Part shown: piece by piece, positions 6,738 to 42,205 of the stretch | Numbering within the stretch: the stretch's first letter is position 1 | How the letters are laid out: each line of letters starts with the position of its first letter | Assembly: GCF_006345805.1 (NCBI RefSeq) | Contig: NC_043007.1 | Coordinates: forward strand, 47,678,001 to 47,742,000 | DNA from: Octopus sinensis | Taxonomy: Eukaryota | Reading direction: 5' to 3' | DNA: 64,000 nt | The notes under the pieces: model-generated | Seen by the model: the letters and a program-made list of their open reading frames with translations, nothing else | Told to the model about the DNA's origin: nothing | The model's database searches: none | Made by a program: the position numbers and the translations under genes

Positions 6738-7137
6738 GTAGGAGTGGCTGTGTGGTAAGTAGCTTGCTTACGAACCACATGGTTCCGGGTTCAGTCCCAT
6801 TCCGTGGCACCTTGGGCAAGTGTCTCCTACTAGAGCCTCGGGCTGACCAAAGCCTTGTGAGTGGATTTGGTGGATGAAAACTGAAAGAAGCCCGTCATAT
6901 ATATGTATATAAATATATATGTGTATGTGTGTATATATGTTCGTGTGTCTGTGTTTGTCCCCACCAACATCGCTTGACAACCGATGCTGGTGTGTTTACG
7001 TCCCCGTAACTTAGCGGTTCGGCAAAAGAGACCGATAGAATAAGTACTAGGCTTACAAAGAATAAGTCCTGGGATCGATTTACTCAACTAAAGGCGGTGC
7101 TCCAGCATGGCCACAGTCACATGACTGAAACAAGTAA

Positions 7138-7138
<1 letters not shown>
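6738..7138 (+). mobile_element. tRNA-derived SINE, family A, full length with internal microsatellite
   Basis: Head GGAGTGGCTGTGTGGTAAG..GGGTTCAGTCCC, CCTTGGGCAAGTGTC core, tail GACTGAAACAAGTAAA; many homologous copies in the window. Confidence 0.92.
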
Positions 7139-7175
<37 letters not shown>

Positions 7176-7399
7176 TATATATACATATATACATATATAT
7201 TATCTTATTTAGGGTTAAAAGTTCTATTGCCACCACCATCACCACTAGCAACAATAATTAAGGTCCTGACAATGATGATGATGACAATTAAAATATAAAA
7301 AAATCCCTGACAAAGGCTATTTACAACATTTCTAAAAATAGCCCAACAATTGCTGCCTCGGCCGGGGTTAAGATACAGGACTCTTGACATGTTCAACAA

Positions 7400-7740
7400 A
7401 GCGTGACGCCTAAACCAATCAGCTCAACCAACCAATCAGCTTAAGTAATTGAGTGATACTACACACTGATTGGTCAGAATACAGTTTGCAAAACATAGCA
7501 ATCTGGAGCCTACACAGCTGTATTTAAGGCACAGATTTAATCATCTCGCTATAGTCAAAAATTGTGAAGCATGAACCTGAAGATTGCAGAATTTAATGCA
7601 TGAAAATACTAGTTCAATCTGAATGAACATTTAACATTCTATTATATTATTTTATTTTATTATATTACATTATCTTATATTATATCATTATAAGATTGTA
7701 AATAAAACGTGAAAATCAGACAAGGTTGGAATTCCTTTTA
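7400..7740 (+). mobile_element. Probable solo Penelope-like terminal repeat with degenerate hammerhead motif (7571-7616)
   Basis: TGAAC-CTGAAGA-TTGCA-loop-TGCAT-GAAA-ATACTA-GTTCA: stem I (TGAAC/GTTCA) and stem II (TGCA/TGCA) present, stem III degenerate; CCAAT motifs upstream, AATAAA downstream. Confidence 0.45.
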
Positions 7741-7785
7741 TTAATATATTCTTCTATACACAATCACACACACCCGTATATATAC

Positions 7786-7816
<31 letters not shown>

Positions 7817-7851
7817 TGTATGTATGTATGTATGTATATACATATATAGAC

Positions 7852-7976
7852 GCAGGCGTAGCTGTGTAGTAAGGAGCTTGCTTCCCAACCACACGGTTCC
7901 GAGTTTAGTCCCACTGCGTGCCATCTTGGACAAGTTGCCTCGTGCCGACAAAACGGAAACTGAAAGAAAACCGTCA

Positions 7977-8066
<90 letters not shown>

Positions 8067-8174
8067 CGTGCCGCAGCCAAATTACTGAAACAAGTAAAAG
8101 AAAAAAAAAGATACATATGCAAATAGACAGACAGACAGATAGATAGATACATAGATAGATAGATACATAGATAC

Positions 8175-8260
<86 letters not shown>
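7852..8260 (+). mobile_element. Family A SINE, internally deleted, with long (TG)n and a following (TAGA)n array
   Basis: SINE head at 7852-7975, (TG)n about 7985-8065, tail ACTGAAACAAGTAAAAG, then (GATA)n. Confidence 0.85.
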
Positions 8261-9140: not shown

Positions 9141-9647
9141 TTGAAAACGAATAAACTTAATATTATAAATAACTGCTACGACAACACTTACAACGTCAAC
9201 AATTATAATTGGCTTCGAAATGGGAAAAAGTAAATAAACTACACGTGAATGTAAATTCCTTTCAAATTTTAAACACAAGCCCAGTAATTTTTGAAGGGAG
9301 GGGTAAGTCCATTACACTGACCCAGTACTTGACTGGTACTTATTTTATCGACTCCAAACAGATGAAAGGTAAAGTGGATCTCAGCGTGATTTAAACTCAG
9401 AAGATAAAGTCAGATGAAATGTTACAAAGCAGATTATCCAGCGTGGTAACAATTCTGCCTGTTTACTTTCTTGTCTAGAAACGTAAATTATAAACAGTAA
9501 ATAAAAAAAGCATATTTTCATAATGTTTATATTTCTGCTTCAATTTTTATGAATGTAAATATTACATATAATCAGAGCCGGTCAAGAACAAAACAAATTC
9601 GAATCAGAATATATCATCCAAACAGCAACCCATCACAGAACACTTAC

Positions 9648-9907
9648 CTGATAACTTCTTTGTTTGTTGTCCATAAATTCAAAGATGGTTTTTCAGAAAC
9701 GACAGATGGCGATTTACAATCCAGCGCTTCAGGAACTTGAAGTTCACTGGCAATTTTATTATTTTCCCCTTCAACATTATTTTCCACCGAACTACGACCT
9801 AATTGAGCATCTTGAGAGCTTTCTGTTACTAAACCATGTTCTTCCGTTTTTTTATCTAATAAAGGGCTTGACGTAGTATCTGTTACCAAACTTTCTGTGT
9901 CAGCCAT
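9648..9907 (-). CDS. First coding exon of an uncharacterised protein (MADTESLVTD...NLWTTNKEVI)
   Basis: AAGATGGC start context, 260-nt non-repetitive open frame rich in S/E/T, consensus donor CAG|GTAAGT, phase 2. Confidence 0.7.
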
Positions 9908-10299
9908 CTTCAATCAAAATGGCAGTGATGTTTATTTTCCGGGGGGCTTTTTATTGCAATTCTTTTCCTTTCTTTCTTGCTTCCCTGTTTGTTGGGTTAA
10001 GTTTTTTTGTGTTGTTGTTGCTGTTGGGGTTTTTTTCTCTCTTTTTCCTTGTTCACTTTTTACAATCTTGTAATGGAAAACAGAATTTGCCAGTGGCTTG
10101 GTTTGCAAGAAATTGTTTTATTTCCTTCCACCTTTCGAATAATATTTTGTACTAAGAGGTAGAAATTTTTTTTCACAAACTTACAAGTGGCACCGTGTGC
10201 TCAGTGCCTGTGTTGCTTTCTTCTTTCTCCTCGTGTGTCTGTACATGTGTGTGTGTGTACTCCGTGACATCTTGTGATGATATCGCTCGATATTGATGA

Positions 10300-17260: not shown

Positions 17261-17370
17261 AAAAACTTACAAAGGATTTAGATAATCCTATCAGATGGTG
17301 CTATTAAGTTAGACATGGCCTGGACCAACCTTTGGTCGAAACATATTTAAGTTTTATGTATATATATATA

Positions 17371-19370
17371 AATGGAGTTAAACGCAGGTGTAATTCAAAT
17401 TCTTTTACTTCCGACACATGTTTCGAAGATATCACTAGTATTATTCCAAAGGAATAAAATGGTGTGAAACAATGTAATCTTCTCTTCAGGGAAGTGTAGA
17501 AATGAAACTCGTCAATAAGACATTTTAACAGAAAATGATGGATATGTATAATGATTAATTGGACGCTATTAATATTGTTTCAAAAAAACTTTATAGGATA
17601 AAACGTCAGATGTAGCCTATGGAAAGGGGAGGGATAAAGTAGAGGAAAACTAAATAAATGAGAAGTATATGACTATATGTATATTAAATAAAACCTTATA
17701 TACTAGGAAAATATATATTTAGTGAATGTGAAATATAAAAAGAAAATTAATGTATAGATTATATATAATGATAGAGATCACTTATATGAACTAAGGGTGT
17801 GTTTTTGCCAATGTTTACATTGGTATGCACGCTCTATAACCGTGTTTAAAAGAAGAGTTTTAGAAAAAATAAAAAATAGTTCAGAATTACAGAGAAGACA
17901 GAATTCCTAGTCTTTATCCATAAGGTATCTAGATTGAGAATCAACCAATCTAAATTAAATTGTTTATTGTGGCCTTTAGATCCCAAATTAATTTACTAAG
18001 CCCTGTACTGTTACGTTTATTTCTATCCCTAAATGAAGAGTAATGATTAGAAATTCTTTTAGATAACTGGGAAGAAGTTCTTCCTATATAAAAATATACT
18101 TGATTACAAGTAATAATTTTACACTGCTATATAAAATTTTAAATTTTACAGTTACTTGACATAAACGTGATTCTGTTGTAATTGACTTCTGATACAATAA
18201 CTTTATTATTAATATTTCTAGAGGGATGGATGGTATTAGCTAAATTAACGTTAGTATTAGTTTATGTATTAATATTTAACAGGTTGATATTATATGAAGA
18301 GATAATTTGTAAGGGATTTTTAGTGTTTGAAAAACCAATCCTAACCGTATATGAGTTGATAATAAAGTAATGCCTAGAATTCTTTGGAAAATTCCTATTA
18401 ATAGCTTCACGAAACTGCAATGGAAGATTAGATTTAATTTACCTCACGTATGGAATAATTAACCAAATGGTTTTACTACTAGTTATCTTATTTTTAGTGT
18501 AATTATTTTTGAAAGACTTAAATTTACCTTTAGAATGAAAACAGGGGATTGAATAAGGGTTATCTCCCTTCGTCCGTTTTGTTTTGGTGTATAAATTAAA
18601 ATTGATATCTATAATTTCTTTACAACTAGATTTCATATCTACATTAGTAAAGTTAGAATAAGATTGAATGGAATCAATGTAGGTAACTTTCTCTGTATAA
18701 CATGCTTTAAGTAAGGCAGAATTATAAAATTCGGCTTTATCATTGAAAATGTCAACATTAGCAGATAACTTAGACAATCTCAATGAAATATTCTTAACTA
18801 AGTTCCTAGTAATTACCCTAGAATGATTACTGAATTTGCTAATATACTTAAGATTGGTCGATGGTTTATGGTATGGGAAGTAAGAGTTATTGTGTAAGTT
18901 AAGTGTAATGTCTAAAAAGTTGGCTTTCGTCATATCATCATCAAAAACGAAGCTTAAACCCATTCTTCGGAAAATTTTAACTAAATTATTCTTAACTTTT
19001 TGTACCTTTTGGTTGGAAACATTTTGGAGGTAAAATAAACAATCATCACGATATAGACCTCCATTAATGTTTTGGAGCTGTTCTGTCATTTCAAGGTGGC
19101 TTATCTGGTATCCCTTGAAGAAATCTGTCCCGAACACGTTTAAAGGTGATAGAATCCTTTTCCTCTTTGATCAGTTTTGGGACAATGCTAAACAGGGCAG
19201 GGCCTGTTGAGGAAAAGAAATTGTGTCGCAGTGTACCCATATGTTGTGATCCTGAAGAGAAGATTACATTGTTTTACACCATTTTATTCCTTTGGAATAA
19301 TATTAGTGATATCTTTGAAACATGTGTCGGAAGTAAAAGAATTTGAATAACACCCGCGTTTAACTCCATT
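17371..19370 (-). mobile_element. Penelope-like element, 5'-truncated, RT and GIY-YIG remnants, with 120-bp inverted terminal repeats
   Basis: ORF 18439-19137 has GLYRDD..NFLDITL..YHKP..YISKFSNH; downstream GRTSSQLSKRISNHYSSF..RNSTGLSKLIWDLK is GIY-YIG-like. 17371-17490 and 19251-19370 are inverted copies with 5 mismatches in 120. Confidence 0.9.
17407..17495 (-). ncRNA. Type I hammerhead ribozyme in the PLE 3' terminal repeat
   Basis: ACTTCC-CTGAAGA-GAAGAT-[long loop]-ATCTTC-GAA-AC-ATGT-GT-C^GGAAGT: perfect 6-bp stem I, perfect 6-bp stem II, intact core, GUC triplet, minimal stem III with near-palindromic loop. Confidence 0.8.
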
Positions 19371-20465: not shown

Positions 20466-22265
20466 GGGAGGAGAATGCGGGTGTAGTAGGATGTTAATTG
20501 GTCAAGTGCCCTGAAAGTGACTTTTTGTCGATGGTAGTAGTGATTGAATTCTTGAGATATCTCTTTTGAATGTATTGTTTATAATATTTGCATAGGTGTT
20601 ATTCTAAACAGAAGTAGTAGTAAAGAAAGGAAGGTGGTGGCGGAAAGGGAGAAGAAGAAGAAGGAGAAAGAGAAAGAAAGAATAATAAGAGAATGCGGGA
20701 CGGTATGATAGTAGTAGGATGTTAAATGGTCAAATGACCTAAAAGTGACTTGATGTGAATTACAGCAGTGATTGGGACTGTTTTTAATGAATTTTTGGGT
20801 ATCTCTTGAACGTATCATTTTTAATATTTGCTTGTGCGTTTGTGTTAATCTAAGGCAGTGATGGAAATGCCGTTTGTTGTAGATGCGTTCAAAAGGGGTC
20901 TGTATTTAGTAATAAAGAGAGTATTTTTACTAATTCGTTGGGTACAGGTTGTATTGTCCCTGAATTGGTAGAGGGGAAAAATTCTGAAGCTTGAATTTTT
21001 GTTATTGGCGCAAATGTCGATGTGTTGGCTGAATGCTATTTTTCTGTTTTAGCGAATTTTGATTTGGGATCTGTGCAGAACCTTCCTTTGACGTAGACTG
21101 TTTTTTGTTTTGTTTTGTTTTTTTGGCATGTGTATTGCTCTTGACACCCAGAGTAGGTTAGTGAGTATATCAGGTTCTCCGAAGCACATGTGAAGCTACT
21201 TTTCACTGTGAAACGTTGTCCCTGCTTGAAGGAGAACTCTGATCCCTCAATTAAATTGACGCATATCCCACAGTTGTGTCTTCCGCATTTTTTTACTGAC
21301 GGCTCCTCTGTTGTTGCTGAGCATATTCGGGCTTGTGTTAGGAGACTTTTCATAGATTTGCTTTTTATGATGGTGTGTGTTTGGAGGATTAAGTTCATTC
21401 TGTGGTCCTTTTTTTTTTTAGCAAGGGAATGTTTTGAAGGATGGTGTCGAAGGCTTCATTGCTAAGAGGGTTGTGTGTGGAGATGTATGGTGGGGCTTTT
21501 GTTTGTAAATACTTCTTTAATTTGAGACGTCTGAGTTCGTGGATGTTGAGTTGTAGGGCATGTTGAAAGTATATGTCAATTAGTGAACATGGGTAGTTCC
21601 TGGTGATGAGTGTATCCTCTAGTTCATGTAGTCGTGTATTTCTGGTGCTTGCATTAGAAACTATAGTACATATCCTTTTTGCTAGGTTGAAGGGGATATT
21701 CATTCTGGTATGTCTGGGGTGGCATGAGTTGAACGGTAAATATTGCTTGGAGTCTGTGGGCTTATAGTATATATCTGTTTCTGTCACGTTGTTAGATTTC
21801 TTAATGAGGATGTTGAGAAAGGGAAGTTAATGATGGTTATATTCTATCGTGAATTGGATGTTTACGTCAAGTCCATTTAAAAGCGCTTGGAATTCTTTAA
21901 GTTTCTCTACCTTTTCATGTCAAAGAATGAAACAGTCATCCAGGTATTTCTTCCAGTTATTTTCTATGTAGAGGGAGAATGGGCCGCCGTATTTTTCTAG
22001 AACCTTACGATAAAGACTAATTTCTAGATATCCCATGACTAGGTTGTCAAAGGAGGGGACCATTCTCCCACCCATCACAATCCCCGATTTTTGTCGATAG
22101 AAGTTGTCTTTGAAAACGAAGAAGTTATTCTCCAAGTTGAATTTTAGCCCTTTCATCACGAATTCTGTTTTCGATGCGATGTGAGAGTTTGTTGGCGTAA
22201 TTCTCTAACCAGAATTGAATTGCCTCTATTCCTAGGTCATGCGAGGAAAAGAATGATGTACCATC
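20460..22265 (-). mobile_element. Penelope-like element (Neptune-like): RT, zinc-finger linker and GIY-YIG, frameshifted
   Basis: PHDLGIEAIQFWL, YRQKSGIVMGG..WKKYLDDCF, DIYYKPTDSKQYLPFNSCHP, CGRHNCGIC..FTCASENLIY; two diverged 3' direct repeats at about 20470-20600 and 20690-20830. Confidence 0.9.
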
Positions 22266-24076: not shown

Positions 24077-24379
24077 ATTGTTTGTTCCTTCTCGAGCCAT
24101 CCCTGGCTCATTAGGGCTGGTTTCCCGGTTTCCTTGGCGTACAGGTTCCCCACCTGGACGGGACGCCGGTCCGTCGCAGGTGAGCTGCAAGATGCGGGAG
24201 GAAAGAGTGAGAGAAAGTTGTGGCGAAAGAGTCAGCAGAAGTTCGTCATTTCCGTCTACCGGAGCCATGTGGAGCTTAGGTGTTTCGCTCATAAACACAC
24301 ACATCGCCCGGTCTGAGATTCGAACCCACGATCCCTCGACCGCGAGTCCGCTGCTCTCACCACTAGGCCATGTGCCTCC
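24077..24379 (-). mobile_element. Young tRNA-derived SINE, family D, with a Meta-domain-like centre
   Basis: A box TGGCCTAGTGG, B box GGGTTCGAATC; CCTGCGACGGACCGGCGTCCCGTCCAGG..GAAACCGGG resembles the MetaSINE core as I recall it; CpGs intact. Confidence 0.7.
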
Positions 24380-24604
24380 ACATAAGCAGGATTAAACTTG
24401 AATATATTCTAGTTATATTTTTAAAACTATAAGGTACAATTGTGACAGATTTAGCAACTATTTCTCACTGGTCTAAGGTTCACGTAGAGGCAATCTTTCG
24501 TTGGATTGGGCATGTACTTTTATATTCTGTTTTTAGGCAAGAGCTTTTGTTTGATCTCCTTAAAATTATACCCTACTGTCTTAGAAAAAGAAGTAAAGAG
24601 GATC

Positions 24605-25040: not shown

Positions 25041-26766
25041 TGCCTGAATGATAAAATAGTCACAGCTGAAATTCCTATGATTGTGGGTGCAGCTAGGACA
25101 GGGATGACAAAAGACTAAAATGATAACTAGATTGAAATTCAGAAATCAGATTTAGTTCGAAGAAAGAGAGCGTCCATCTACCTAATCGATAATTACTTTC
25201 CTTACTATAATTATTTTATCATTCATCTTCTGTATCGCTATACAACTATGGCTAGTTTAAAATTTGTCAAGACGATGTAGGAACGATACAATAAAATATA
25301 AAATGGTCAAATAATTTCGAACTTACTTATTTCCCTTACTAGAAGTTATTTCCCATGAGTTCGAATTTGTGCAAGTTGCCTCCCTTGCTTTCATAACTTT
25401 ATATAAACGTTACGTTGCTATTTTGAGTTTACATAACCTGATAATCTCATTACGTTCTCTCTTAATACTAAATATGCTAGCGTTGACAGAGATTATTCGA
25501 AATATTTGGACATAGTTTAAGATCTTTACTATACTCTGCAATATGTCTGATGTTTCTGGTTGAAGCTGTTCCGATCACATTCTCCAACGTGTTCAGTATC
25601 CACGTACGTTCCACTATGCACTTCAATATACTTTTCTATAAGATGTATACAAATGTGTGCGTGTGTGTTGTCATTGTTCAGTATTAGATCAGCCACACTC
25701 GAATACATCTATGATCAAAGACATTCTACTTCTGAACACCGTGTACTTTTAGAACATATCATCAAGAACCACATTATCCATTGTACCATTTTTTTATGTA
25801 TATTGTAGGACGTAATGTCATAGAAATTTGGCTATTATTTCCAGCACATATTCGTGTACATCACTACAGCACCGTCCCATATGTGTGTATATTATTACAG
25901 CACTACTCTATATTTGTATATACCAACGTATCACCATCCCTATCAGTGTATATTACAACATTACCACTCCGTAACTTCTGTATCATCACTCCATTTGTAT
26001 ATATATATATTCCTATAGCACTACCCCATATCCCTATATACAACTGAATCATTGCCCTCTTATTTATGCATACCCACTCCATATATGGGTATACAACCTT
26101 CCCAGCCAGCAAAACCATATCAGGCCAATATCAAACCGCCTATATCAGTCCTACATCAGAAACTGTGTCGCTTTGATTTCAGTCCAATCTCATTTTGCAA
26201 CATGGCACAATATCGGGCCAACATATTCCCCAATGTTGGGCTGATATAGTTGGTCACTGGCAGTCCAAAGCCATTCTCAAGTCACCAACTTAACCTCTGC
26301 TTCTGTTGCATTTTTCATAGTCTTGTGAACAGCCCCTGAAATTAATTAATTATGCTACTTAAAAGGAGTTCTTAATGTGAGAATAACAAATGTGCTCACA
26401 TCCATTTACTCATGTGCTATTCACAAAGGCAAAACTCTACTAGCATAAATTACATGGATTTGACTAATTCTACAGTTGAAAACAGATACAAATACTCATA
26501 AACATTCACTACTGTTTTATGTCAGAAGCTACCAAAGCTAGTACATCCACTCCCCACACCCACAGTCTGGCTAAAACAGTACTCAAAGTGAATATTAATA
26601 TCATCATATACCCAACCCAGGGCCATTTTCAGTCCAATGACCGCAAATCAAAATTTTTTAAATGCAGTTATTTTCAATACACTATGAGCAAAGAATAAAA
26701 TGTATGCTCAAATGTAAAGCAAAATGTAGAATAATGGCCTTTTTGTCAAACATCAAAAGCAATTAA

Positions 26767-27220
26767 CAGGGTTCCTGCAGGTTTTTAAAAAGAAAATTGA
26801 AGGTTTTTCAAGAGTATTTTCAAGCTAGATTCAAGGACCATCACGACCACTCCACAAAAAATTCAAGAGTTTCCAAGGACATCCTTCTGATAAAACATAA
26901 CTATTTACATTGCTTAGGTTCTCAAATCATATTGTTTAAATATCACCCAATTGTTGACTAATGTGTAGCAATGTTTCCATGCCAGTGTTGGCAACACTGA
27001 TAAGGAAACATTGCAAATATGAATTCAGATGATTGGTTAAAATAGAACACTTTTCTTCTGTAGTACGGGGAGTGAACTGAATATAAAACTTTTAAATAAA
27101 AATCCAAAGTTTTCAAGGATTGCTGTGTGTCTGAAGAATTTTCAAGGGCTTTCCAGGCCTAAAATTTTACTTTTGAAATTCAAGGGTATTCAAGGAATTC
27201 AAGGACCTGCGGGAACTTTG
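26767..27220. mobile_element. Nested MITE, CAGGG terminus, 5-bp TSD ATTAA (hAT5-like)
   Basis: TIR CAGGGTTCCTGCAGGT / ACCTGCGGGAACTTTG; ATTAA at 26762-26766 and 27221-27225; about 10 TTC(A/C)AG subterminal motifs. Confidence 0.7.
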
Positions 27221-28195
27221 ATTAAGAAATTAGTAAGGTTGCAGCATGATTTTCATTTTTAGGGTTATATATGTGGGCACAGGCTTACCTGCATAAGGAT
27301 CTGCCAGCAATTATCCTCTCATATATAACATTTGGTATCTCAACATAGTGGTTAATCTCAATACTCTGAAAGCCAAACTAGCATATGTCCATTTTTCAAA
27401 GATAATTCTTGCATTTTTTCAGCAAAACCATACAGATACAGATATTGTAAGAAGTGGCTTGATGTGCCAGTTCTAAAGATATCCATATCTGTATGGTTTT
27501 ACCGAGAGAGTTCCAAGAAATTTCAAGCTGTGGGCCAGTTTGATTGATGATTTGGGTAAATGGTAAACATAGATCTGAGCTCTTTCAAAAAGATATAATA
27601 GAAAAATTGCTCGTTTCACCTCCAGAATGCATAAACCCCATAACATTAATGTCAATACAACTGCTTTGTTAACTGGTTGAGTGTTGGAAGCAACTGTTGT
27701 GGTTTTAAAAAAATGTGGATTATCAGCAAAAGGTCACAATTCTGCTAATATTGACAATCAATATATGATTGGCTGTTGGCTGCACAGCATATGTAATGAT
27801 GATAGCTCATCTTGAAAAATGTTCAAAAGCAGGTTTCTGTTTCTGAACTGATACACCTGCAAATACTGTTCCACCTGGGATGATTTGTTGAGTCATGCTA
27901 ACTGTTGGACAGCCTCACCTCTCGTCTGTGATATCTAATAGTTCAGCTTAGAAAATGTAGTGCTGCCGATGGCTATGTCGTCAGCACTTCATCCAGTAAG
28001 ATGAACTTCCTTACCTGAGTGGCATTATCACACCTGTGTAATTAGAGCACAGATATCAATTTGGGTTTGGTAGATATTGAATTGAGTTATTGGATATCAG
28101 CATATACTGATAATACACATATCAGCTCATCACTAGGAGATGGTTATTCAATTTGGGGAATTGGGTATACAAAGGCTGATAACTTTGATACTTAC

Positions 28196-30355
28196 TGTGA
28201 ATCACTGATGAAAGTTTCAACTGGCCAAATGAAGGTTTGCCTTTTTTGCCATACCAGTTATATAGCTTGCTTAACTTTCTGGTCAGGATGTTGCATACTG
28301 TGTCACTAGAATTTTTACCCCCAAGCACAACAAAGTAATTAACCTGAAAATGGATGGATTCTGTTACAAAGCTTTACACTCTACAAGCTAAATGACTGAT
28401 AATACATTCACACTTTATATTAGGAGAACACAAAAAAGCACAGCTGATATGAGAGTATAGAAAATTTGTCAATCATTTCAAACATATTTGAATTATAAAT
28501 TAGATGTAAGGGCTTCAACAATTTTGTTTTAATGACAGAGTGATAAATTTGGGTTGGTAAATATAAGGGCCCAGAAAGATATCTCATCATTAAATTATAT
28601 ATGGTGCACAAAGTCAATTTCAGAATCTAGGCTAGTTTGTGGCAAATAGTGACAACATACAAATAGGATCAAGGTTTGCAAATTGTTTATGCATATGATG
28701 TCCACTTGTCAGAGGATTTAAACCCTCTGCCATTCACTGACTTATCTTATTTTACCAGTAAAACAGAACTTGTAAACCACAGTACACAAGCACCATGTTA
28801 CTTTCTAAAGTTCCCGCTGGAACCTTAATCAAATAATCTTTTCAACTGAATAACAGGTTGATGCGCTTAAATATTTTTAATTACCATACATTCACAACAA
28901 ATCAAATCTGAAGTTATGAGTACTGAGATGAGCACACAATGATGGGTGTGAGTTTCTTTGGTGTGTGTGCGGGATATGGAAACATGCATGTGAAGAATGA
29001 AGGAAGCAATCGTCACATGTAAGTGGACAGATCAGTTAGAGAGGGACAGAGAAGTTATTAATGAACCAGCAGGTAAAACCATGAAAATGTAAAATGTACA
29101 ACTTACCATGTTATTTTGAACTGCCTATCACTTAACTTAGCTTCCAAAGCCTCAACATCCTCTTGACTCTCATAAGGGTAATGAATTGTGTTGGGGAGAT
29201 TTCTTGTCTCCGAAATGGAGAATGAGGATGGAATATGTTGAATTAGCTGCAGTATAGACTGCAGCATTTCCCTCTGCTAGGACTGTTCCTCTCAATTTTT
29301 TTCAACTGTGGTGAATAGCAGCTGATCCCGAACTGAAACAGAAAATAGAAAAAAAAAAGGTAGAGTTATGATATACTTGCTGAGTATACTTCATGACATT
29401 AGTAGTTTACAGATATACTGAGAATAACACATAATCAATAATAATCTCATTTCACATTTGCTTTCTGGAATCAGAGACATCACTAAACCAACAATCAATT
29501 ATCTGTAGCCTTATATAAGGTCTAGTATAGCACTAATATTTATTTGTCCTTTCTAGTGTGCCATAGTTAGGGGTAAGGGTCTCATATTTCAGAAATGGGA
29601 GTTATGATATCTATTTAACAGGGAAGTGGAACCTTGTTTCAGTGCCCCAGGGGCCTCTAGAATAGTAAAAGACACCAAAGTTAATATTACAGTATTATAT
29701 TCCTCATGCTAATACAAGCAAAGTTTTTATACCTCTTCACCCAAAAGAGAAAACGTCCAACATGGAGATGTTGTGGCTAGCTGAAGCTAAAACTTATGAT
29801 ATCCTCACACAAATATCAACAGACCAATTAGGATGAGTTATACAATTTATTGTTTTTAAGTAATCCTTTAGAAACAAGATAGGTTAAATTGGTAAAATTC
29901 TTGAAAATGCATTTTGTCTTTTGACTCTACCTTCATTTACCTGCCAAATATTTCTTAAGTAATGTAATTATGTATCAGGGTGAAAGCAAACATTTCAAAC
30001 ATAGCTCTCCATGAAATGACCCCAAGAGCTGCTTTCAAACACAGAATGTTTTATTTTTCTGTTTGTAAATAAATTTGAAACCACTTTCCACATACGCTAA
30101 AGTATACCAACGATATAATATTGTCTTACCATGCAACAACTGTTCAGATTTTCCCAACAAGTTGGGAGGAGCTACATTTGCACTTCTTTCTTTTGGCATA
30201 TAGTGAATGTCAGTTGGCTGTGGATATCTGCTTGGCTCTGGAGAAGACAAGCGAGGTTGAGATACTCTCTCTCTTTTGGAAGCTGAACGACAGGAGGTGG
30301 CTTTGGAAGCATCCGTCTTTGATACTCAGAATCATCATTTGAGAAAACTGGTGCC
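28196..30355 (-). pseudogene. Spliced DUF4806-domain gene, decayed (exons 30355-30130, 29332-29107, 28343-28196)
   Basis: Reconstructed ..EMLQSILQLIQ..LPNTIHYPYESQEDVEALEAKLSDRQFK/NNM|VNYFVVLGGKNSSDTVCNILTRKLSKLYNWYGKKGKPSFGQLKLSSVIH matches the DUF4806 pattern from memory; canonical GT-AG sites; 2 in-frame stops and at least 2 frameshifts. Confidence 0.75.
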
Positions 30356-32859
30356 CTATAGAAAATAAAATGAAAAATAAACAGGGAATTACATGTACTT
30401 CCTTTCACACAGTAAATAACATGGATATATGTTTGTCAAAACATAACCTTAGAACACATTGCAACTCGTACAAATGTTTATAATAAGCCTCAAACCTGTA
30501 GTGCTATCTATGGAAATTTCTGACAGCCTATCCACACTTTCATGTAAAAGGAAAGGTGGATGGTGAGTGGGGACTCAGAGTATCCTCAGGAACTGATATT
30601 CGGCCCTATTTCCAATGCAAATAATAAATTCAGCAAACATAGAGTGATCCTCACTGTCAGATATGTTGATAAACCCCAAGACATAAAAAAATAAATGAAC
30701 ATCTAAAAGGGATTCACTAATTATTAAAGAACTGTTTGTCTGAAATTTGTAGACAAGCTATCTGTAGCCCTCCTAATGATATCCATTTCTGTAGGATTTC
30801 ATTGAGAAATTTGAAATATATTTTGAGCTGTGGCAGGTTTATGTTGGTTTATTTTCTGTTTGTTTTTGGCTACGCGTACCAAAACGAATAATCTGTCAAA
30901 TGTTGATAACCATTCAATTATTAGCTTCAAATGTAAACGTCATAATGTTTGTTGATGCTTCAAAACAACGATTTTAACAACTTTTTTTCATCCTAATTTA
31001 ACGTAAATTAGAAGTTTGGATCCAAGTTTTGAAAATCGTGTGCACTATTCTAAGCATTTTTAGTCTTATTTACGACACTAGGTAAATCATGTATTTTTCT
31101 TTTCTTTTTTTTTTTAATTTTAATATCCTAACTTTCGACAAGGATATTGAATTTCCCTGGTATCGATATGGAAAATGAAAGGATTGCATTATGAGTTGCT
31201 TCCCCTGTCCCTGCTTGGGACACAAGAATATTCCGATGTGGAGTACTGTTAAAGAAAATCACAATACTGCTACAAATACAATTTTTTCTGCATGGACGAT
31301 GATAGTAGTAAACGGAACTGACAATGAAAAATTTTAAACATAAAATAACACCGTTTTGATGTATTGATGACAGGCCGATATCGGCAAAAAATTACCGATA
31401 TTCCGCTGATCACCCAATATCGGCCCGATATGGTCATGCTGGCTGGGTTACTACCGCTTTATTTGTATGTATATATTTACATATGCACACAAGCCATAGT
31501 TTGCTTTTGCATGGCTGACCCGGACCTAAACGACAATAATAACAGTCCTATATTATACTTCAGATAAGAAGCCAATTTCACCTTTTATATAACCCAATAA
31601 CTTTCCCACGGAAGGGATTGAAACCAGTCGTACAAACCAATGAATCACTCATCAGTTTCATTATGCAGCTACAGCTTGCGGTGAAGAATTATATTATTTT
31701 GCAGTACCTATTTAGAGCTACATAGACATGGTTGTTGCTATTTTAGTAACCTAACTGCAAGCACAATGCCTTACACCAACCGCTGATTTCCAACTGGCTG
31801 TTTGATTCCAGTTAGCTCAGTAATATGTTGAAGTAAGAGGAGCGGTACTCAAACTAACTTTCTAGATATATATTGACAATGAAAGCCTCGTAAATGAAGA
31901 AATCTTGCCCATGTATACAACCCCTCGTAGTTTTTAGCTACTTCGTCTACTGTCTTACATTGTTCTTAATTCTTGCTAAATATGGATCTTAATTAGCGAG
32001 TGTTCGTTATCCAACAGAACTGAGTTCATCTCTTGTAAACGTGCGAGTTTCCACATGGACGATTGCATTGCTAAAAATAACAACAAAATATCAGTATCGC
32101 TTTTCAAAAAAATCCACGGCATTATCATAAATATTACATGTAGAACATTGTTTAATTGACATAACTTTGGGGTAGCTTTCAGTTGTGCGCCCAGCGTTAA
32201 AATAATATTGGTGAGCACTCCTAAACCACGAGCAGTGTCAGGATACTCATACTGAGTTAGCAATGAGTGTCCAGTGGGTGGAGAGTCGATGCAATTCCGA
32301 AAGTGTAATATCTGAGACTGAGGTGGTGACCAGCACGGGCAATTGGAGCAGCAGCAGCATATTAGATGATAACAACAGCAGCGACAGCAATGGCAGCAGT
32401 CACACCAGCAGAGCATCAAGCAGCAGCGGTGACTACGACGACAATACCAACAGCTTCAATAGTACCGGCAATGTGTCCGGCAGGGCAGCAACTACAACCT
32501 TCTTGACAGCAACCGCGACACCAAGATCGCATCCAGCAATAGCAGCATCAATGACAGCGACACTGGCCACAGCATAAGCGGCAGCAACGGGCCCGGCAGA
32601 CAGCAGCATCAGTAGCGATAACAACAGCGGCTGTAACACCACCAGGACAAGAGCATAGACACGGAAATATGTCGGATCTACAGGCAGCTTGTTCAAGCAT
32701 CGACTGAGCAACCACGGGTCTTCCTTTCAGATAACCTCACGTCACAGGCTAGCTACGTATGGCGTTTGAAACTGGTGAGTACGTCATACATAATTTAACT
32801 GAGGATCTTAGAACAACCGGGGCCATAGCTCAACGGGTTTAAACGTTTTGAGCGAGATG

Positions 32860-41705: not shown

Positions 41706-42205
41706 TGAGGGTTGGCTGGAATGTTCATAGGCTGAGCAAGACACTCTCATGGAATGTGACCAAATGAAGTTCATTTCTTAACATAGTTCCTCTTACTTTC
41801 AACACACTTCCATAAGTAGTTGCAGTATTTGGATTGCACTGGTGAAGGAGCTATCTTGTTGGTCAAAATAGTCATCAACAGCACATAAGACATCATCATC
41901 ACAGTGATACTGGTGCCCAGCTGAGTGATTTTTCATGTTGGGAAACAGATGATAACCAGATGGAACCAAATCACTAACATAGGAAGGGTGATCAGCCAGT
42001 TCAAAACCAGTCGCACACAGCAGCCATTGAAACCAAGGACTTGTGTACTGAAGCATTGTCCTAATGAAACAAGATCCCATTCATCACTTTTTCTGGGCAC
42101 TTGGTCATGATAGCTTTTTGTAACTGCTTTTGCAAGTTGGCATTGAACTTTCCATTGATGTTATTATCATTTTGAAGATAGTCAATAAACACAATATTTT
42201 TTGCA
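41706..42205 (-). mobile_element. Mariner transposase C-terminal remnant with one TIR
   Basis: IVFIDYLQ..INGKFNANL..GILFH and GFELADHPSYVSDLVPSGYHLFPNMK (degenerate YSPDLAPSD); TA|TGAGGG end at 41704-41711. Confidence 0.9.

What the first reader, a model, noticed from the sequence alone, without database searches (positions are those of the whole stretch)
26101..31447. Complete CCCAG-ended transposon whose only recognisable cargo is a spliced DUF4806 gene
Seen: matching 31-bp TIRs, TT duplication, CCGATAT subterminal arrays and at least three exons of a DUF4806 protein; no clearly recognisable transposase. From memory, CCCAG ends with 2-bp TSD characterise animal CMC/EnSpm elements. Inference: DUF4806, of unknown function, is the accessory (TnpA-like) DNA-binding partner for the subterminal repeats, and this element is a deletion derivative that kept only it. 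This gives a defined protein/binding-site pair to test.
Basis: partly seen in the sequence, partly recalled or inferred. Interest (0 to 1): 0.7.

Follow-up and report, generated by a model that had tools for sequence, protein, structure and literature searches.

The report
Dead octopus CACTA-type transposon, BEN-gene remnant
This is a dead, internally deleted copy of a known kind of animal "cut-and-paste" transposon. Its intact relatives in clam, scallop and sea cucumber always carry a transposase gene plus a second gene for a predicted DNA-binding protein (DUF4806, a BEN-type domain), so there is now a concrete protein and binding-site pair to test.

Summary
Window 26101-31447 is bounded by 31-nt inverted repeats (27/31) starting CCCAGCCAGCA and flanked by TT/TT. 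CCGATAT-type motifs pile up at both ends. Four minus-strand exons of a DUF4806 gene lie inside, and there is no transposase.

The gene is a wreck: three in-frame stops, one frameshift, and both ends missing.

Complete relatives share the termini and a 2-bp duplication. They are a clam element (9.6 kb, AT/AT), a scallop element (10.9 kb, AT/AT) and a sea cucumber element (13.3 kb, AC/AC). Each carries a roughly 660-710-aa transposase with the published motifs of animal CACTA-related (TRC) elements, followed on the same strand by an annotated DUF4806 gene.

An Octopus sinensis copy still holds a decayed transposase, part of the gene's first domain and 1.1 kb that the window copy lacks. The window element is therefore a deletion derivative.

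The termini nearly match Hydra EnSpm-4N1_HM, so the element type is known. DUF4806 models as a BEN DNA-binding fold.

Every lineage has a palindrome at nucleotides 17-31 from each tip. Its half-site differs by lineage (TCGG in molluscs, TTGG in sea cucumber). Whether the BEN protein or the transposase binds it is untested.

The parts
26099..26100 (.). Left copy of the 2-bp target-site duplication (TT)
   Evidence: Sequence reads AACCTT|CCCAG. Relatives have 2-bp AT, AT and AC duplications.
26101..26131 (+). Terminal inverted repeat at the 3' end of the element (relative to the internal gene): CCCAGCCAGCAAAACCATATCAGGCCAATAT
   Evidence: 27/31 complementary to 31417-31447. The first 11 nt are identical to the clam element's tip.
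26117..26131 (.). CpG-decayed palindrome ATATCAG-G-CCAATAT at nt 17-31 from the tip
   Evidence: Same position as ACATCGG-C-CCGATAT (clam 3' end), ATATCGG-G-CCGACAT (scallop 3' end) and ACGTTGG-G-CCAACAT (sea cucumber 5' end).
26101..26254 (.). 3' subterminal region with decayed motif copies starting at 26117, 26125, 26142, 26210 and 26241
   Evidence: 5 loose motifs in 200 bp against 0.125 expected.
26245..26250 (.). Internal deletion junction. About 1.1 kb is missing, including the end of the DUF4806 reading frame.
   Evidence: Window 26176-26245 matches L008 17249-17180 and window 26250 matches L008 16083. L008 and L001 continue the frame (..TASDKNGGRKRR..).
26250..26335 (-). DUF4806 pseudogene exon D (C-terminal tail), truncated, with a stop at 26277-26279
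   Evidence: tblastn with P0005: AVHKTMKNATEAEVKLVT*EWLWTASD, 50% identity, E 2e-4. The acceptor AG and reading phase fit exon C (read).
28196..28343 (-). DUF4806 pseudogene exon C (core of the BEN-type domain: VNYFVVLGGKN..YNWYGKKGKPSFGQLKLSSVIH)
   Evidence: tblastn hits from about 30 family members, E down to 1e-13. Part of the PF16064 hit.
29107..29332 (-). DUF4806 pseudogene exon B (coiled-coil region and start of the domain). Stops at 29292-29294 and 29277-29279, frameshift near 29125.
   Evidence: 74-79% identical to octopus proteins P0002, P0003 and P0004. Stops are seen in the translation. Only the shifted frame gives ..AVQNNM|GTAAGT as in P0003.
30130..30325 (-). DUF4806 pseudogene exon A (Ser/Pro-rich linker). 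The upstream limit is uncertain.
   Evidence: 89% identical to P0002 residues 22-57. The donor G|GTAAG is phase-compatible with exon B.
30866..30876 (.). 5' deletion junction (about 30871). The transposase gene and the first-domain exons of the DUF4806 gene are missing.
   Evidence: Homology to O. sinensis L008 stops at window 30871 = L008 10426. L008 has a transposase remnant at 7088-8181 and a first-domain fragment at 9874-10038. O. vulgaris L001 shares the window's junction.
30872..31447 (-). 5' terminal region of the non-autonomous subfamily
   Evidence: Continuous 80% match to L001 up to its tip. No match in L008.
31375..31431 (.). 5' subterminal motif array. Exact CCGATAT/ATATCGG copies start at 31375, 31378, 31395, 31417 and 31425. 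Includes the palindrome ATATCGG-C-CCGATAT at 31417-31431.
   Evidence: Positions from the tip (17, 25, 47, 64, 67) match the clam (17, 25, 28, 47, 63) and scallop (17, 25, 28, 47) 5' ends.
31417..31447 (-). Terminal inverted repeat at the 5' end of the element: CCCAGCCAGCATGACCATATCGGGCCGATAT on the minus strand
31448..31449 (.). Right copy of the 2-bp target-site duplication (TT)
   Evidence: CTGGG|TTACTA.

Best explanation
Shown: the 5,347-bp element is a dead, non-autonomous, internally deleted copy of an animal CACTA/EnSpm-related ('TRC') DNA transposon. Full-length members of this lineage carry two tandem genes on one strand. The first is a transposase of about 660-710 aa. The second is a protein of about 270-390 aa built from a small beta-rich first domain, a disordered linker, a long helix and a DUF4806 (BEN-fold) domain.

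The ends start CCCAG and insertion duplicates 2 bp. Each tip carries a 15-nt palindrome at nt 17-31, followed by arrays of the same half-site.

In the octopus lineage one deletion removed the transposase and the first exons of the second gene. The window copy and an O. vulgaris copy at another locus share this junction, so the deleted form itself spread. A second deletion, in the window copy, removed the end of the gene. CpG decay, stops and a frameshift followed.

Inferred, about 50% likely: the BEN-type protein binds the palindromic half-sites as a dimer and brings the transposase to the ends. This would parallel TnpA in maize En/Spm or the Myb-like protein of PIF/Harbinger. The transposase would then cut at the CCCAG tips.
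For: Ends, motifs and exons in the window.

Complete relatives:
- Clam L003 5897-15508, AT|CCCAGCCAGCA..CTGGG|AT. Intact 688-aa transposase ORF, then the six-exon annotated DUF4806 gene P0039.
- Scallop L009 4199-15126, AT/AT.
- Sea cucumber L010 3592-16869, AC/AC. Intact 663-aa transposase, then P0015.
- Firefly L006 and L007: same gene pair, two copies 98.7% identical.

Transposase: it carries the DeMarco TRC signatures, namely motif I, D-x-PA..CxxC and box A LDYMHLVCLG. Three members give sub-threshold DUF4218 hits on the same profile stretch.

Deletion-derivative status: O. sinensis L008 keeps a transposase remnant (E 6e-70), a first-domain fragment and the 1.1 kb absent from the window.

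Literature: Hydra EnSpm-4N1_HM has the TIR CCCAGCCAACATTGAC and a 2-bp duplication. Aedes TRC has CCCAGTCAAC.

BEN fold: the AlphaFold model has pLDDT 86, and the 13 best PDB matches are all BEN domains, most of them solved in complex with DNA. Probability is up to 1.0, target TM-score up to 0.73, rmsd as low as 2.0 A. DUF4806 is called a BEN subtype.

Site architecture: the palindrome is at nt 17-31 in molluscs, sea cucumber and firefly. The half-site changes symmetrically, TCGG/CCGA to TTGG/CCAA. No Pfam DNA-binding domain was found in the transposases.
Against: No binding data exist.

Foldseek E-values for the BEN matches are weak (0.05-1).

Transposases commonly bind inner TIR sequences themselves, and the first ~190 aa of this one contain a conserved helix-rich stretch that could do so.

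Pfam Transposase_21 does not hit these transposases, so the CACTA link rests on published motifs, sub-threshold DUF4218 hits, termini and duplication length.

The firefly copies lack a recognisable 5' inverted repeat.

The crinoid DUF4806 gene lies next to a different transposase-like ORF, not this one.
Confidence: 0.75

Rival explanations
1. The element's identity is the same, but the transposase itself recognises the palindromic half-sites. The DUF4806/BEN protein then does something else, such as repressing or timing transposition, tethering to chromatin, or importing the transposase into the nucleus.
For: The palindrome lies inside the TIR (nt 17-31), where many transposases bind (established knowledge). 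The transposase has a conserved N-terminal stretch..W...NI.H.A...LL..L....LPKD.RTLL.T. BEN proteins in animals are mostly repressors (own knowledge).
Against: No recognised DNA-binding domain was found in the transposase. The second gene is retained in intact form in every complete element examined. The octopus deleted subfamily kept part of it, though that may be accidental.
Confidence: 0.35
2. The DUF4806 gene is a captured host gene (a passenger) with no role in transposition.
For: DNA transposons do capture host fragments. DUF4806 genes also exist apparently alone, for example the tick loci with several isoforms and the zebrafish chr4 genes.
Against: The same gene order and strand, transposase then DUF4806, is seen in two bivalves, an octopus, a sea cucumber and a firefly, with transposases 41-50% identical. 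A single capture kept intact across phyla implies selection within the element.
Confidence: 0.05
3. The element belongs to another superfamily with CCC or short-duplication ends (piggyBac, PIF/Harbinger or ISL2EU), or the inverted repeat is chance.
For: piggyBac ends also start CCC (own knowledge). A single 2-bp flank match is weak (p = 0.072).
Against: The flanks are not TTAA or TWA. Four independent elements show 2-bp duplications (0.072^4, about 3e-5). The relatives' transposases carry TRC motifs. The tip pattern was absent from shuffled sequence. The termini match a Repbase EnSpm entry.
Confidence: 0.02

Closest known systems
Hydra Spongebob_HMa (Repbase EnSpm-4N1_HM), PMC4298943
   Same: TIR CCCAGCCAACATTGAC against the window's CCCAGCCAGCATGACC: 1 mismatch in nt 1-11. 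Clam L004's end matches 13/13. It also has a 2-bp duplication, a size of 5.8 kb, no usable transposase, and is classed as a TRC/CACTA element.
   Different: Different phylum. Its internal content could not be read here, so whether it also carries a DUF4806 remnant is unknown. DUF4806 is strongly expanded in Hydra genomes.
SmTRC1 and the Aedes/Tribolium TRC elements (DeMarco et al. 2006, PMC1636069)
   Same: CCC-started TIRs and a 2-bp duplication. The Aedes TIR CCCAGTCAAC bounds a 9.2-kb element. The transposase motifs I, CxxC and L/V/I-D-x-L/M-H-x3-L-G are all present in the clam transposase.
   Different: That paper describes alternatively spliced transposase transcripts. In the sections read, it mentions neither a separate DUF4806/BEN gene nor the palindromic subterminal motif.
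Maize En/Spm (CACTA) with TnpD transposase and TnpA subterminal-repeat binder (established knowledge)
   Same: Two element-encoded proteins, subterminal repeat arrays in both orientations, and frequent internal-deletion derivatives (dSpm/I) moved in trans.
   Different: CACTA tips and a 3-bp duplication. TnpA and TnpD arise by alternative splicing of one transcript. TnpA is not a BEN-fold protein as far as I know, and its motif is a 12-mer unrelated to AYRTCGG.
PIF/Harbinger: transposase plus Myb-like DNA-binding protein (established knowledge; mentioned in PMC12730594)
   Same: Two separate genes, with the small protein binding the ends and recruiting the transposase. This is the nearest mechanistic analogy.
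   Different: Different transposase superfamily, a 3-bp TWA duplication, and a Myb/SANT fold rather than BEN.
BEN-domain transcription factors (Insv, Elba/Bsg25A, BANP, BEND3, BEND6, NACC1)
   Same: Best structural matches of the DUF4806 model. Several bind short palindromic or CpG-containing sites as dimers (own knowledge).
   Different: These are host regulators, not transposon genes. Sequence identity is 7-20%. Profile and sequence searches against PDB sequences found no significant match.

Membership tests
Animal CACTA/EnSpm-related (TRC) transposons, CMC group | TIRs begin with CCC (DeMarco 2006) | tested here: met
   Both ends start CCCAGCCAGCA. The same holds in clam, scallop and sea cucumber.
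Animal CACTA/EnSpm-related (TRC) transposons, CMC group | 2-bp target-site duplication | tested here: met
   TT/TT in the window. AT/AT, AT/AT and AC/AC in three complete relatives. Chance per element is 0.072.
Animal CACTA/EnSpm-related (TRC) transposons, CMC group | Repbase rule for non-autonomous elements: same duplication length and termini aligned over nt 1-11 with at most 1 mismatch to a classified element (PMC4455052) | tested here: met
   CCCAGCCAGCA against Hydra EnSpm-4N1_HM CCCAGCCAACA gives 1 mismatch, and both have 2-bp duplications.
Animal CACTA/EnSpm-related (TRC) transposons, CMC group | Autonomous members with the same termini encode a transposase with TRC motif I, D..CxxC and box A [LVI]-D-x-[LM]-H-x3-L-G | tested here: met
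   The clam transposase matches all three by regular expression. The firefly transposase, the sea cucumber transposase and P0036-38 match the D..CxxC motif and box A. The window copy has no transposase.
Animal CACTA/EnSpm-related (TRC) transposons, CMC group | Pfam Transposase_21 (PF02992) / DUF4218 (PF13960) hit | tested here: inconclusive
   No PF02992 hit at E<=1. DUF4218 is below its cut-off of 27 but consistent across members: 25.1-25.9, 21.6 and 13.6 bits on profile positions ~11-84.
Animal CACTA/EnSpm-related (TRC) transposons, CMC group | [quoted passage not shown] | tested here: inconclusive
   CDKC follows the second Asp (ICDAPA). The only H-x3-H (HSGYH) lies before it, and the catalytic E could not be assigned without a reference alignment.
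Plant En/Spm two-component system | CACTA tips and a 3-bp duplication | tested here: not met
   CCCAG tips and 2 bp.
Plant En/Spm two-component system | An accessory protein binds the subterminal repeats | not testable with these tools
   Only indirect support: a BEN-fold second gene and conserved palindrome arrays.
DUF4806 (PF16064), BEN-type domain | Pfam score above the gathering threshold | tested here: met
   27.5 bits against 25 for joined exons B+C. Intact relatives reach E 3e-24. Single exons do not score.
DUF4806 (PF16064), BEN-type domain | BEN fold | tested here: met
   Tested on intact relatives, not on the window pseudogene. Model pLDDT is 86, and the top 12-13 PDB matches are all BEN domains. 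E-values are weak.
DUF4806 (PF16064), BEN-type domain | Sequence-specific DNA binding | not testable with these tools
   Needs EMSA, DAP-seq or SELEX.
piggyBac | TTAA duplication | tested here: not met
   Flanks are CCTT and TTAC.
PIF/Harbinger | 3-bp TWA duplication and a Myb-like second protein | tested here: not met
   Flanks are CTT and TTA. The second protein is BEN-like.

The most novel reading that the evidence does not exclude
The DUF4806/BEN protein is the end-recognition subunit of a two-protein transposition machine shared by a metazoan-wide branch of CACTA-related transposons. It binds as a dimer to the palindrome at nt 17-31 and to the subterminal half-site arrays. It has co-evolved with them: TCGG in molluscs, TTGG in sea cucumber, TAYGG in firefly. 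Stand-alone DUF4806/BEN genes in flies, fish and ticks would then be domesticated copies. That would make these transposons one source of animal BEN-domain regulators.
Probability: 0.4. Interest if true: 0.7.

Novelty: new member of a known kind. Interest (0 to 1): 0.5.

Why it matters
The element in the window is ordinary: a decayed non-autonomous copy of a transposon type already in Repbase.

Following it up gave two results. I found neither described in the searchable literature: no paper combined 'BEN domain' with EnSpm or CACTA, and none of the three DUF4806 papers read describes it as a transposon gene.

First, DUF4806, a BEN-type domain, is the conserved second gene of this transposon lineage in molluscs, an echinoderm and a beetle.

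Second, the ends carry a palindrome fixed in position whose half-site sequence differs between lineages.

Together these supply natural protein and site pairs with built-in specificity swaps. That makes a direct test possible of how animal CACTA-type elements recognise their ends, and of where some BEN-domain regulators came from.

Tried and rejected
- A six-frame, stop-masked Pfam scan of 26260-31250 found nothing.
- tblastn of relatives' transposases against the window found nothing.
- A profile search for the first domain of the DUF4806 protein in the window and in L001 found nothing.
- A search for a paralogous empty site in the window, using joined flanks with 0, 1 or 2 TT, matched only low-complexity sequence.
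- Sequence searches of the transposase and of the DUF4806 profile against PDB sequences gave no significant hit.
- The fold search of full-length P0039 did not identify the first domain.
- The 5' TIR of the firefly copies was not found, nor was that of the O. sinensis copy. The second end of the O. vulgaris copy was not found either.
- Look-ups of P0001 and P0034 found no record.
- Pan et al. 2023 is not in the held library, so it is cited only through papers that quote it.
- L002 (P0036) is an isolated transposase fragment without ends.
- Alternative duplication lengths (3, 4, 8, 9 bp) were read from the flanks and rejected.
Full report
**1. What is in the window**

The stretch 26101-31447 is bounded by 31-nt inverted repeats that are 27/31 complementary. 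A degenerate 21-nt version of the tip occurs only at these two places in 64 kb, with none in 100 shuffles. The junctions read AACCTT|CCCAGCCAGCA... and ...TGCTGGCTGGG|TTACTA, so only TT is duplicated. Longer duplications of 3, 4, 8 or 9 bp do not fit.

All six exact CCGATAT in the window lie within about 110 bp of the tips. Allowing CpG decay (CTGATAT, CCAATAT), there are 5 and 6 copies in the terminal 200 bp, against 0.125 expected. Two of the four TIR mismatches are CpG-to-CpA changes in the left end.

**2. The gene**

On the minus strand there are four exons with phase-compatible GT/AG borders, read:
- A: about 30325-30130
- B: 29332-29107
- C: 28343-28196
- D: 26335-26250

No exon alone reaches Pfam. 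B+C joined score 27.5 bits on PF16064 (cut-off 25). A full HMMER search found 35 homologues, and 26 of the 33 scanned carry PF16064.

The copy is broken:
- TGA at 29292-29294
- TAG at 29277-29279
- TGA at 26277-26279
- A frameshift near 29125. Only the shifted frame gives AVQNNM before the donor site, as in O. sinensis P0003.

Searches support these defects. A six-frame Pfam scan and tblastn with relatives' transposases found no transposase.

**3. Host and other octopus copies**

The closest proteins come from Octopus bimaculoides, O. vulgaris and O. sinensis.

An O. vulgaris locus (L001) holds a copy 80-89% identical. Its tip is TT|CCCAGCTGAC.., its flank is different, and it carries nested mariner-like and SINE-like insertions.

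An O. sinensis locus (L008) holds a fuller copy:
- a decayed transposase at 7088-8181 (E 6e-70 to the clam enzyme)
- a fragment of the gene's first domain at 9874-10038
- the DUF4806 exons
- 1.1 kb, including the end of the reading frame (..TASDKNGGRKRREKK), that the window lacks between 26245 and 26250
- the 3' tip at 17276

Homology between the window and L008 stops at window 30871, whereas L001 runs on to the tip. The window and L001 copies therefore share one deletion that removed the transposase and the first exons, and that deleted form spread to at least two loci. The window copy has a second deletion at its 3' side.

A MetaClust protein (P0004) joins a transposase fragment to exon B. 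This is probably another deletion derivative, or a gene model reading across both genes.

**4. Complete relatives**

| Host | Locus and span | Size | Tips and flanks | Transposase | Second gene |
|---|---|---|---|---|---|
| Clam, Ruditapes philippinarum | L003 5897-15508 | 9.6 kb | AT\|CCCAGCCAGCAGCACTATATCGGGCCGATATCGG ... CTGACTGGG\|AT | intact 688-aa ORF | six-exon DUF4806 gene P0039, same strand |
| Scallop, Mizuhopecten yessoensis | L009 4199-15126 | 10.9 kb | AT/AT | present (frame change near 9200) | P0007 |
| Sea cucumber, Holothuria leucospilota | L010 3592-16869 | 13.3 kb | AC/AC | intact 663 aa, 45% identical to the clam's over 687 aa | P0015 |

Two firefly copies, 98.7% identical, have the same gene pair and a CCCAGCAAAC 3' tip, but no recognisable 5' repeat.

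Four independent 2-bp flank matches have a chance probability of about 0.072^4.

**5. Classification**

DeMarco et al. defined animal 'TRC' elements of the CACTA superfamily by three things: CCC-started TIRs, a 2-bp duplication, and transposase motifs I, CxxC and L/V/I-D-x-L/M-H-x3-L-G. They give CCCAGTCAAC as the TIR of a 9.2-kb Aedes element.

The clam transposase matches all three motifs. Three family members give consistent but sub-threshold DUF4218 hits. Transposase_21 itself does not hit.

Hydra Spongebob_HMa (Repbase EnSpm-4N1_HM) has the TIR CCCAGCCAACATTGAC and 2-bp duplications. By Repbase's rule for non-autonomous elements, the window element falls in the same superfamily. The kind of element is therefore known.

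**6. The second protein**

An AlphaFold model of the clam homologue P0005, built with 22 aligned sequences, has pLDDT 86. Its 13 best PDB matches are all BEN domains, most of them solved bound to DNA: Bsg25A, BANP, BEND3, BEND6, NACC1 and Insv. Probability is up to 1.0, target TM-score up to 0.73 and rmsd as low as 2.0 A, although E-values are only 0.2-1.

Full-length P0039 gives the same result. It also shows a confident beta-rich first domain (residues 1-81), a disordered linker and a long helix.

This agrees with reports that DUF4806 is a BEN subtype. DUF4806 is also strongly expanded in Hydra alongside transposon domains.

**7. The sites**

In clam and scallop the half-site AYRTCGG/CCGAYRT sits at identical distances from the tip:
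- 3' end: 17, 25, 36, 51, 62, 119
- 5' end: 17, 25, 28, 47

The octopus 5' end has 17, 25, 47, 64, 67. All 5' ends share GCGG(A/T)ATATCG(G/A) at about nt 42-53.

In the sea cucumber the palindrome is at the same place, nt 17-31, but reads ACGTTGG-G-CCAACAT. The arrays there, 9-11 per 200 bp, use TTGG/CCAA. In the firefly the central GG-N-CC is again at nt 22-26 (ATTATGG-C-CCGTAAG).

A position-fixed palindrome whose two halves change together points to a dimeric sequence-specific binder that co-evolves with its site.

**8. Mechanism and its limits**

Shown: element identity, the two-gene architecture, deletion-derivative status and the site architecture.

Inferred: that the BEN-type protein is the binder, and that it recruits the transposase.

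The main rival is that the transposase's own N-terminus binds the sites and the BEN protein regulates something else. I put the two at roughly 50% and 35%.

A crinoid DUF4806 gene lies beside a different transposase-like ORF. Tick DUF4806 genes have several isoforms. The gene therefore also exists outside this exact context.

**9. Verdict**

The binding claim is plausible but untested.

The window element itself is a dead member of a known kind. The added value is the conserved BEN-type second gene and the co-varying palindromes in its intact relatives.

Noticed in passing
window 27419-27505, 30773-30833: Inside the element's long intron there is a 40-nt-armed near-palindrome (80% complementary, 7-nt loop). 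One arm recurs as a 61-nt direct repeat (75%) at 30773-30833. It is also present in the O. sinensis copy. It may be a small nested inverted-repeat element.
   Followed up: no
window 18439-19137 and 21036-21787, minus strand: These are the longest non-repetitive ORFs in the window (232, 120 and 130 aa). By eye they look like retroelement remnants, for example a Cys-rich stretch CGRHNCGICV.. and YKPTDSKQYLPFNSCHP. Pfam found nothing at E<=0.01.
   Followed up: partly
window 41799-42080, minus strand: A 93-aa ORF (..HPSYVSDLVPSGYHLFPNMKNH..) resembles the C-terminus of mariner-type transposases by eye. There is no Pfam hit.
   Followed up: partly
window 24078-24395; L001 29612-29997: The ORF at 24078-24395 contains ..RSEIRTHDPSTASPLLSPLGH. 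The roughly 385-bp insertion that interrupts the O. vulgaris copy translates to ..SKPRSYDHESAALTTGPLH. By eye these look like the same short-repeat family. They were not aligned at the DNA level.
   Followed up: no
window 25846-26026: The element sits next to four degenerate copies of a roughly 32-nt unit (69-75% identical), and the window as a whole is rich in AT/AC/ATAC microsatellites.
   Followed up: no
L001 31845-32811, 36799-37497, 39475-40941: The O. vulgaris copy is interrupted by a mariner-like transposase ORF. It is followed by fragments that look like IS1595/Merlin-type and hAT-type transposases (by eye).
   Followed up: no
L005 10001-11893 and 15518-17917 (crinoid Antedon mediterranea): Here the DUF4806 gene lies 3.6 kb upstream of a 799-aa ORF with C2H2-like fingers and a GDNLG..CRYC motif. 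This is a different, possibly Chapaev-like, transposase. Pfam found nothing. DUF4806 may partner more than one transposase lineage.
   Followed up: partly
P0034 cluster (tick Ornithodoros turicata): Several tick loci encode full-length DUF4806 proteins, each with multiple annotated isoforms. This may indicate expressed or domesticated copies.
   Followed up: no
L004 2630-6791 and 10178 (clam): This second clam locus has a transposase C-terminal tail at its start, two partial tandem DUF4806 gene copies, and a 3' tip CCCAGCCAACATT.. that matches the Hydra Spongebob TIR over 13 nt.
   Followed up: partly
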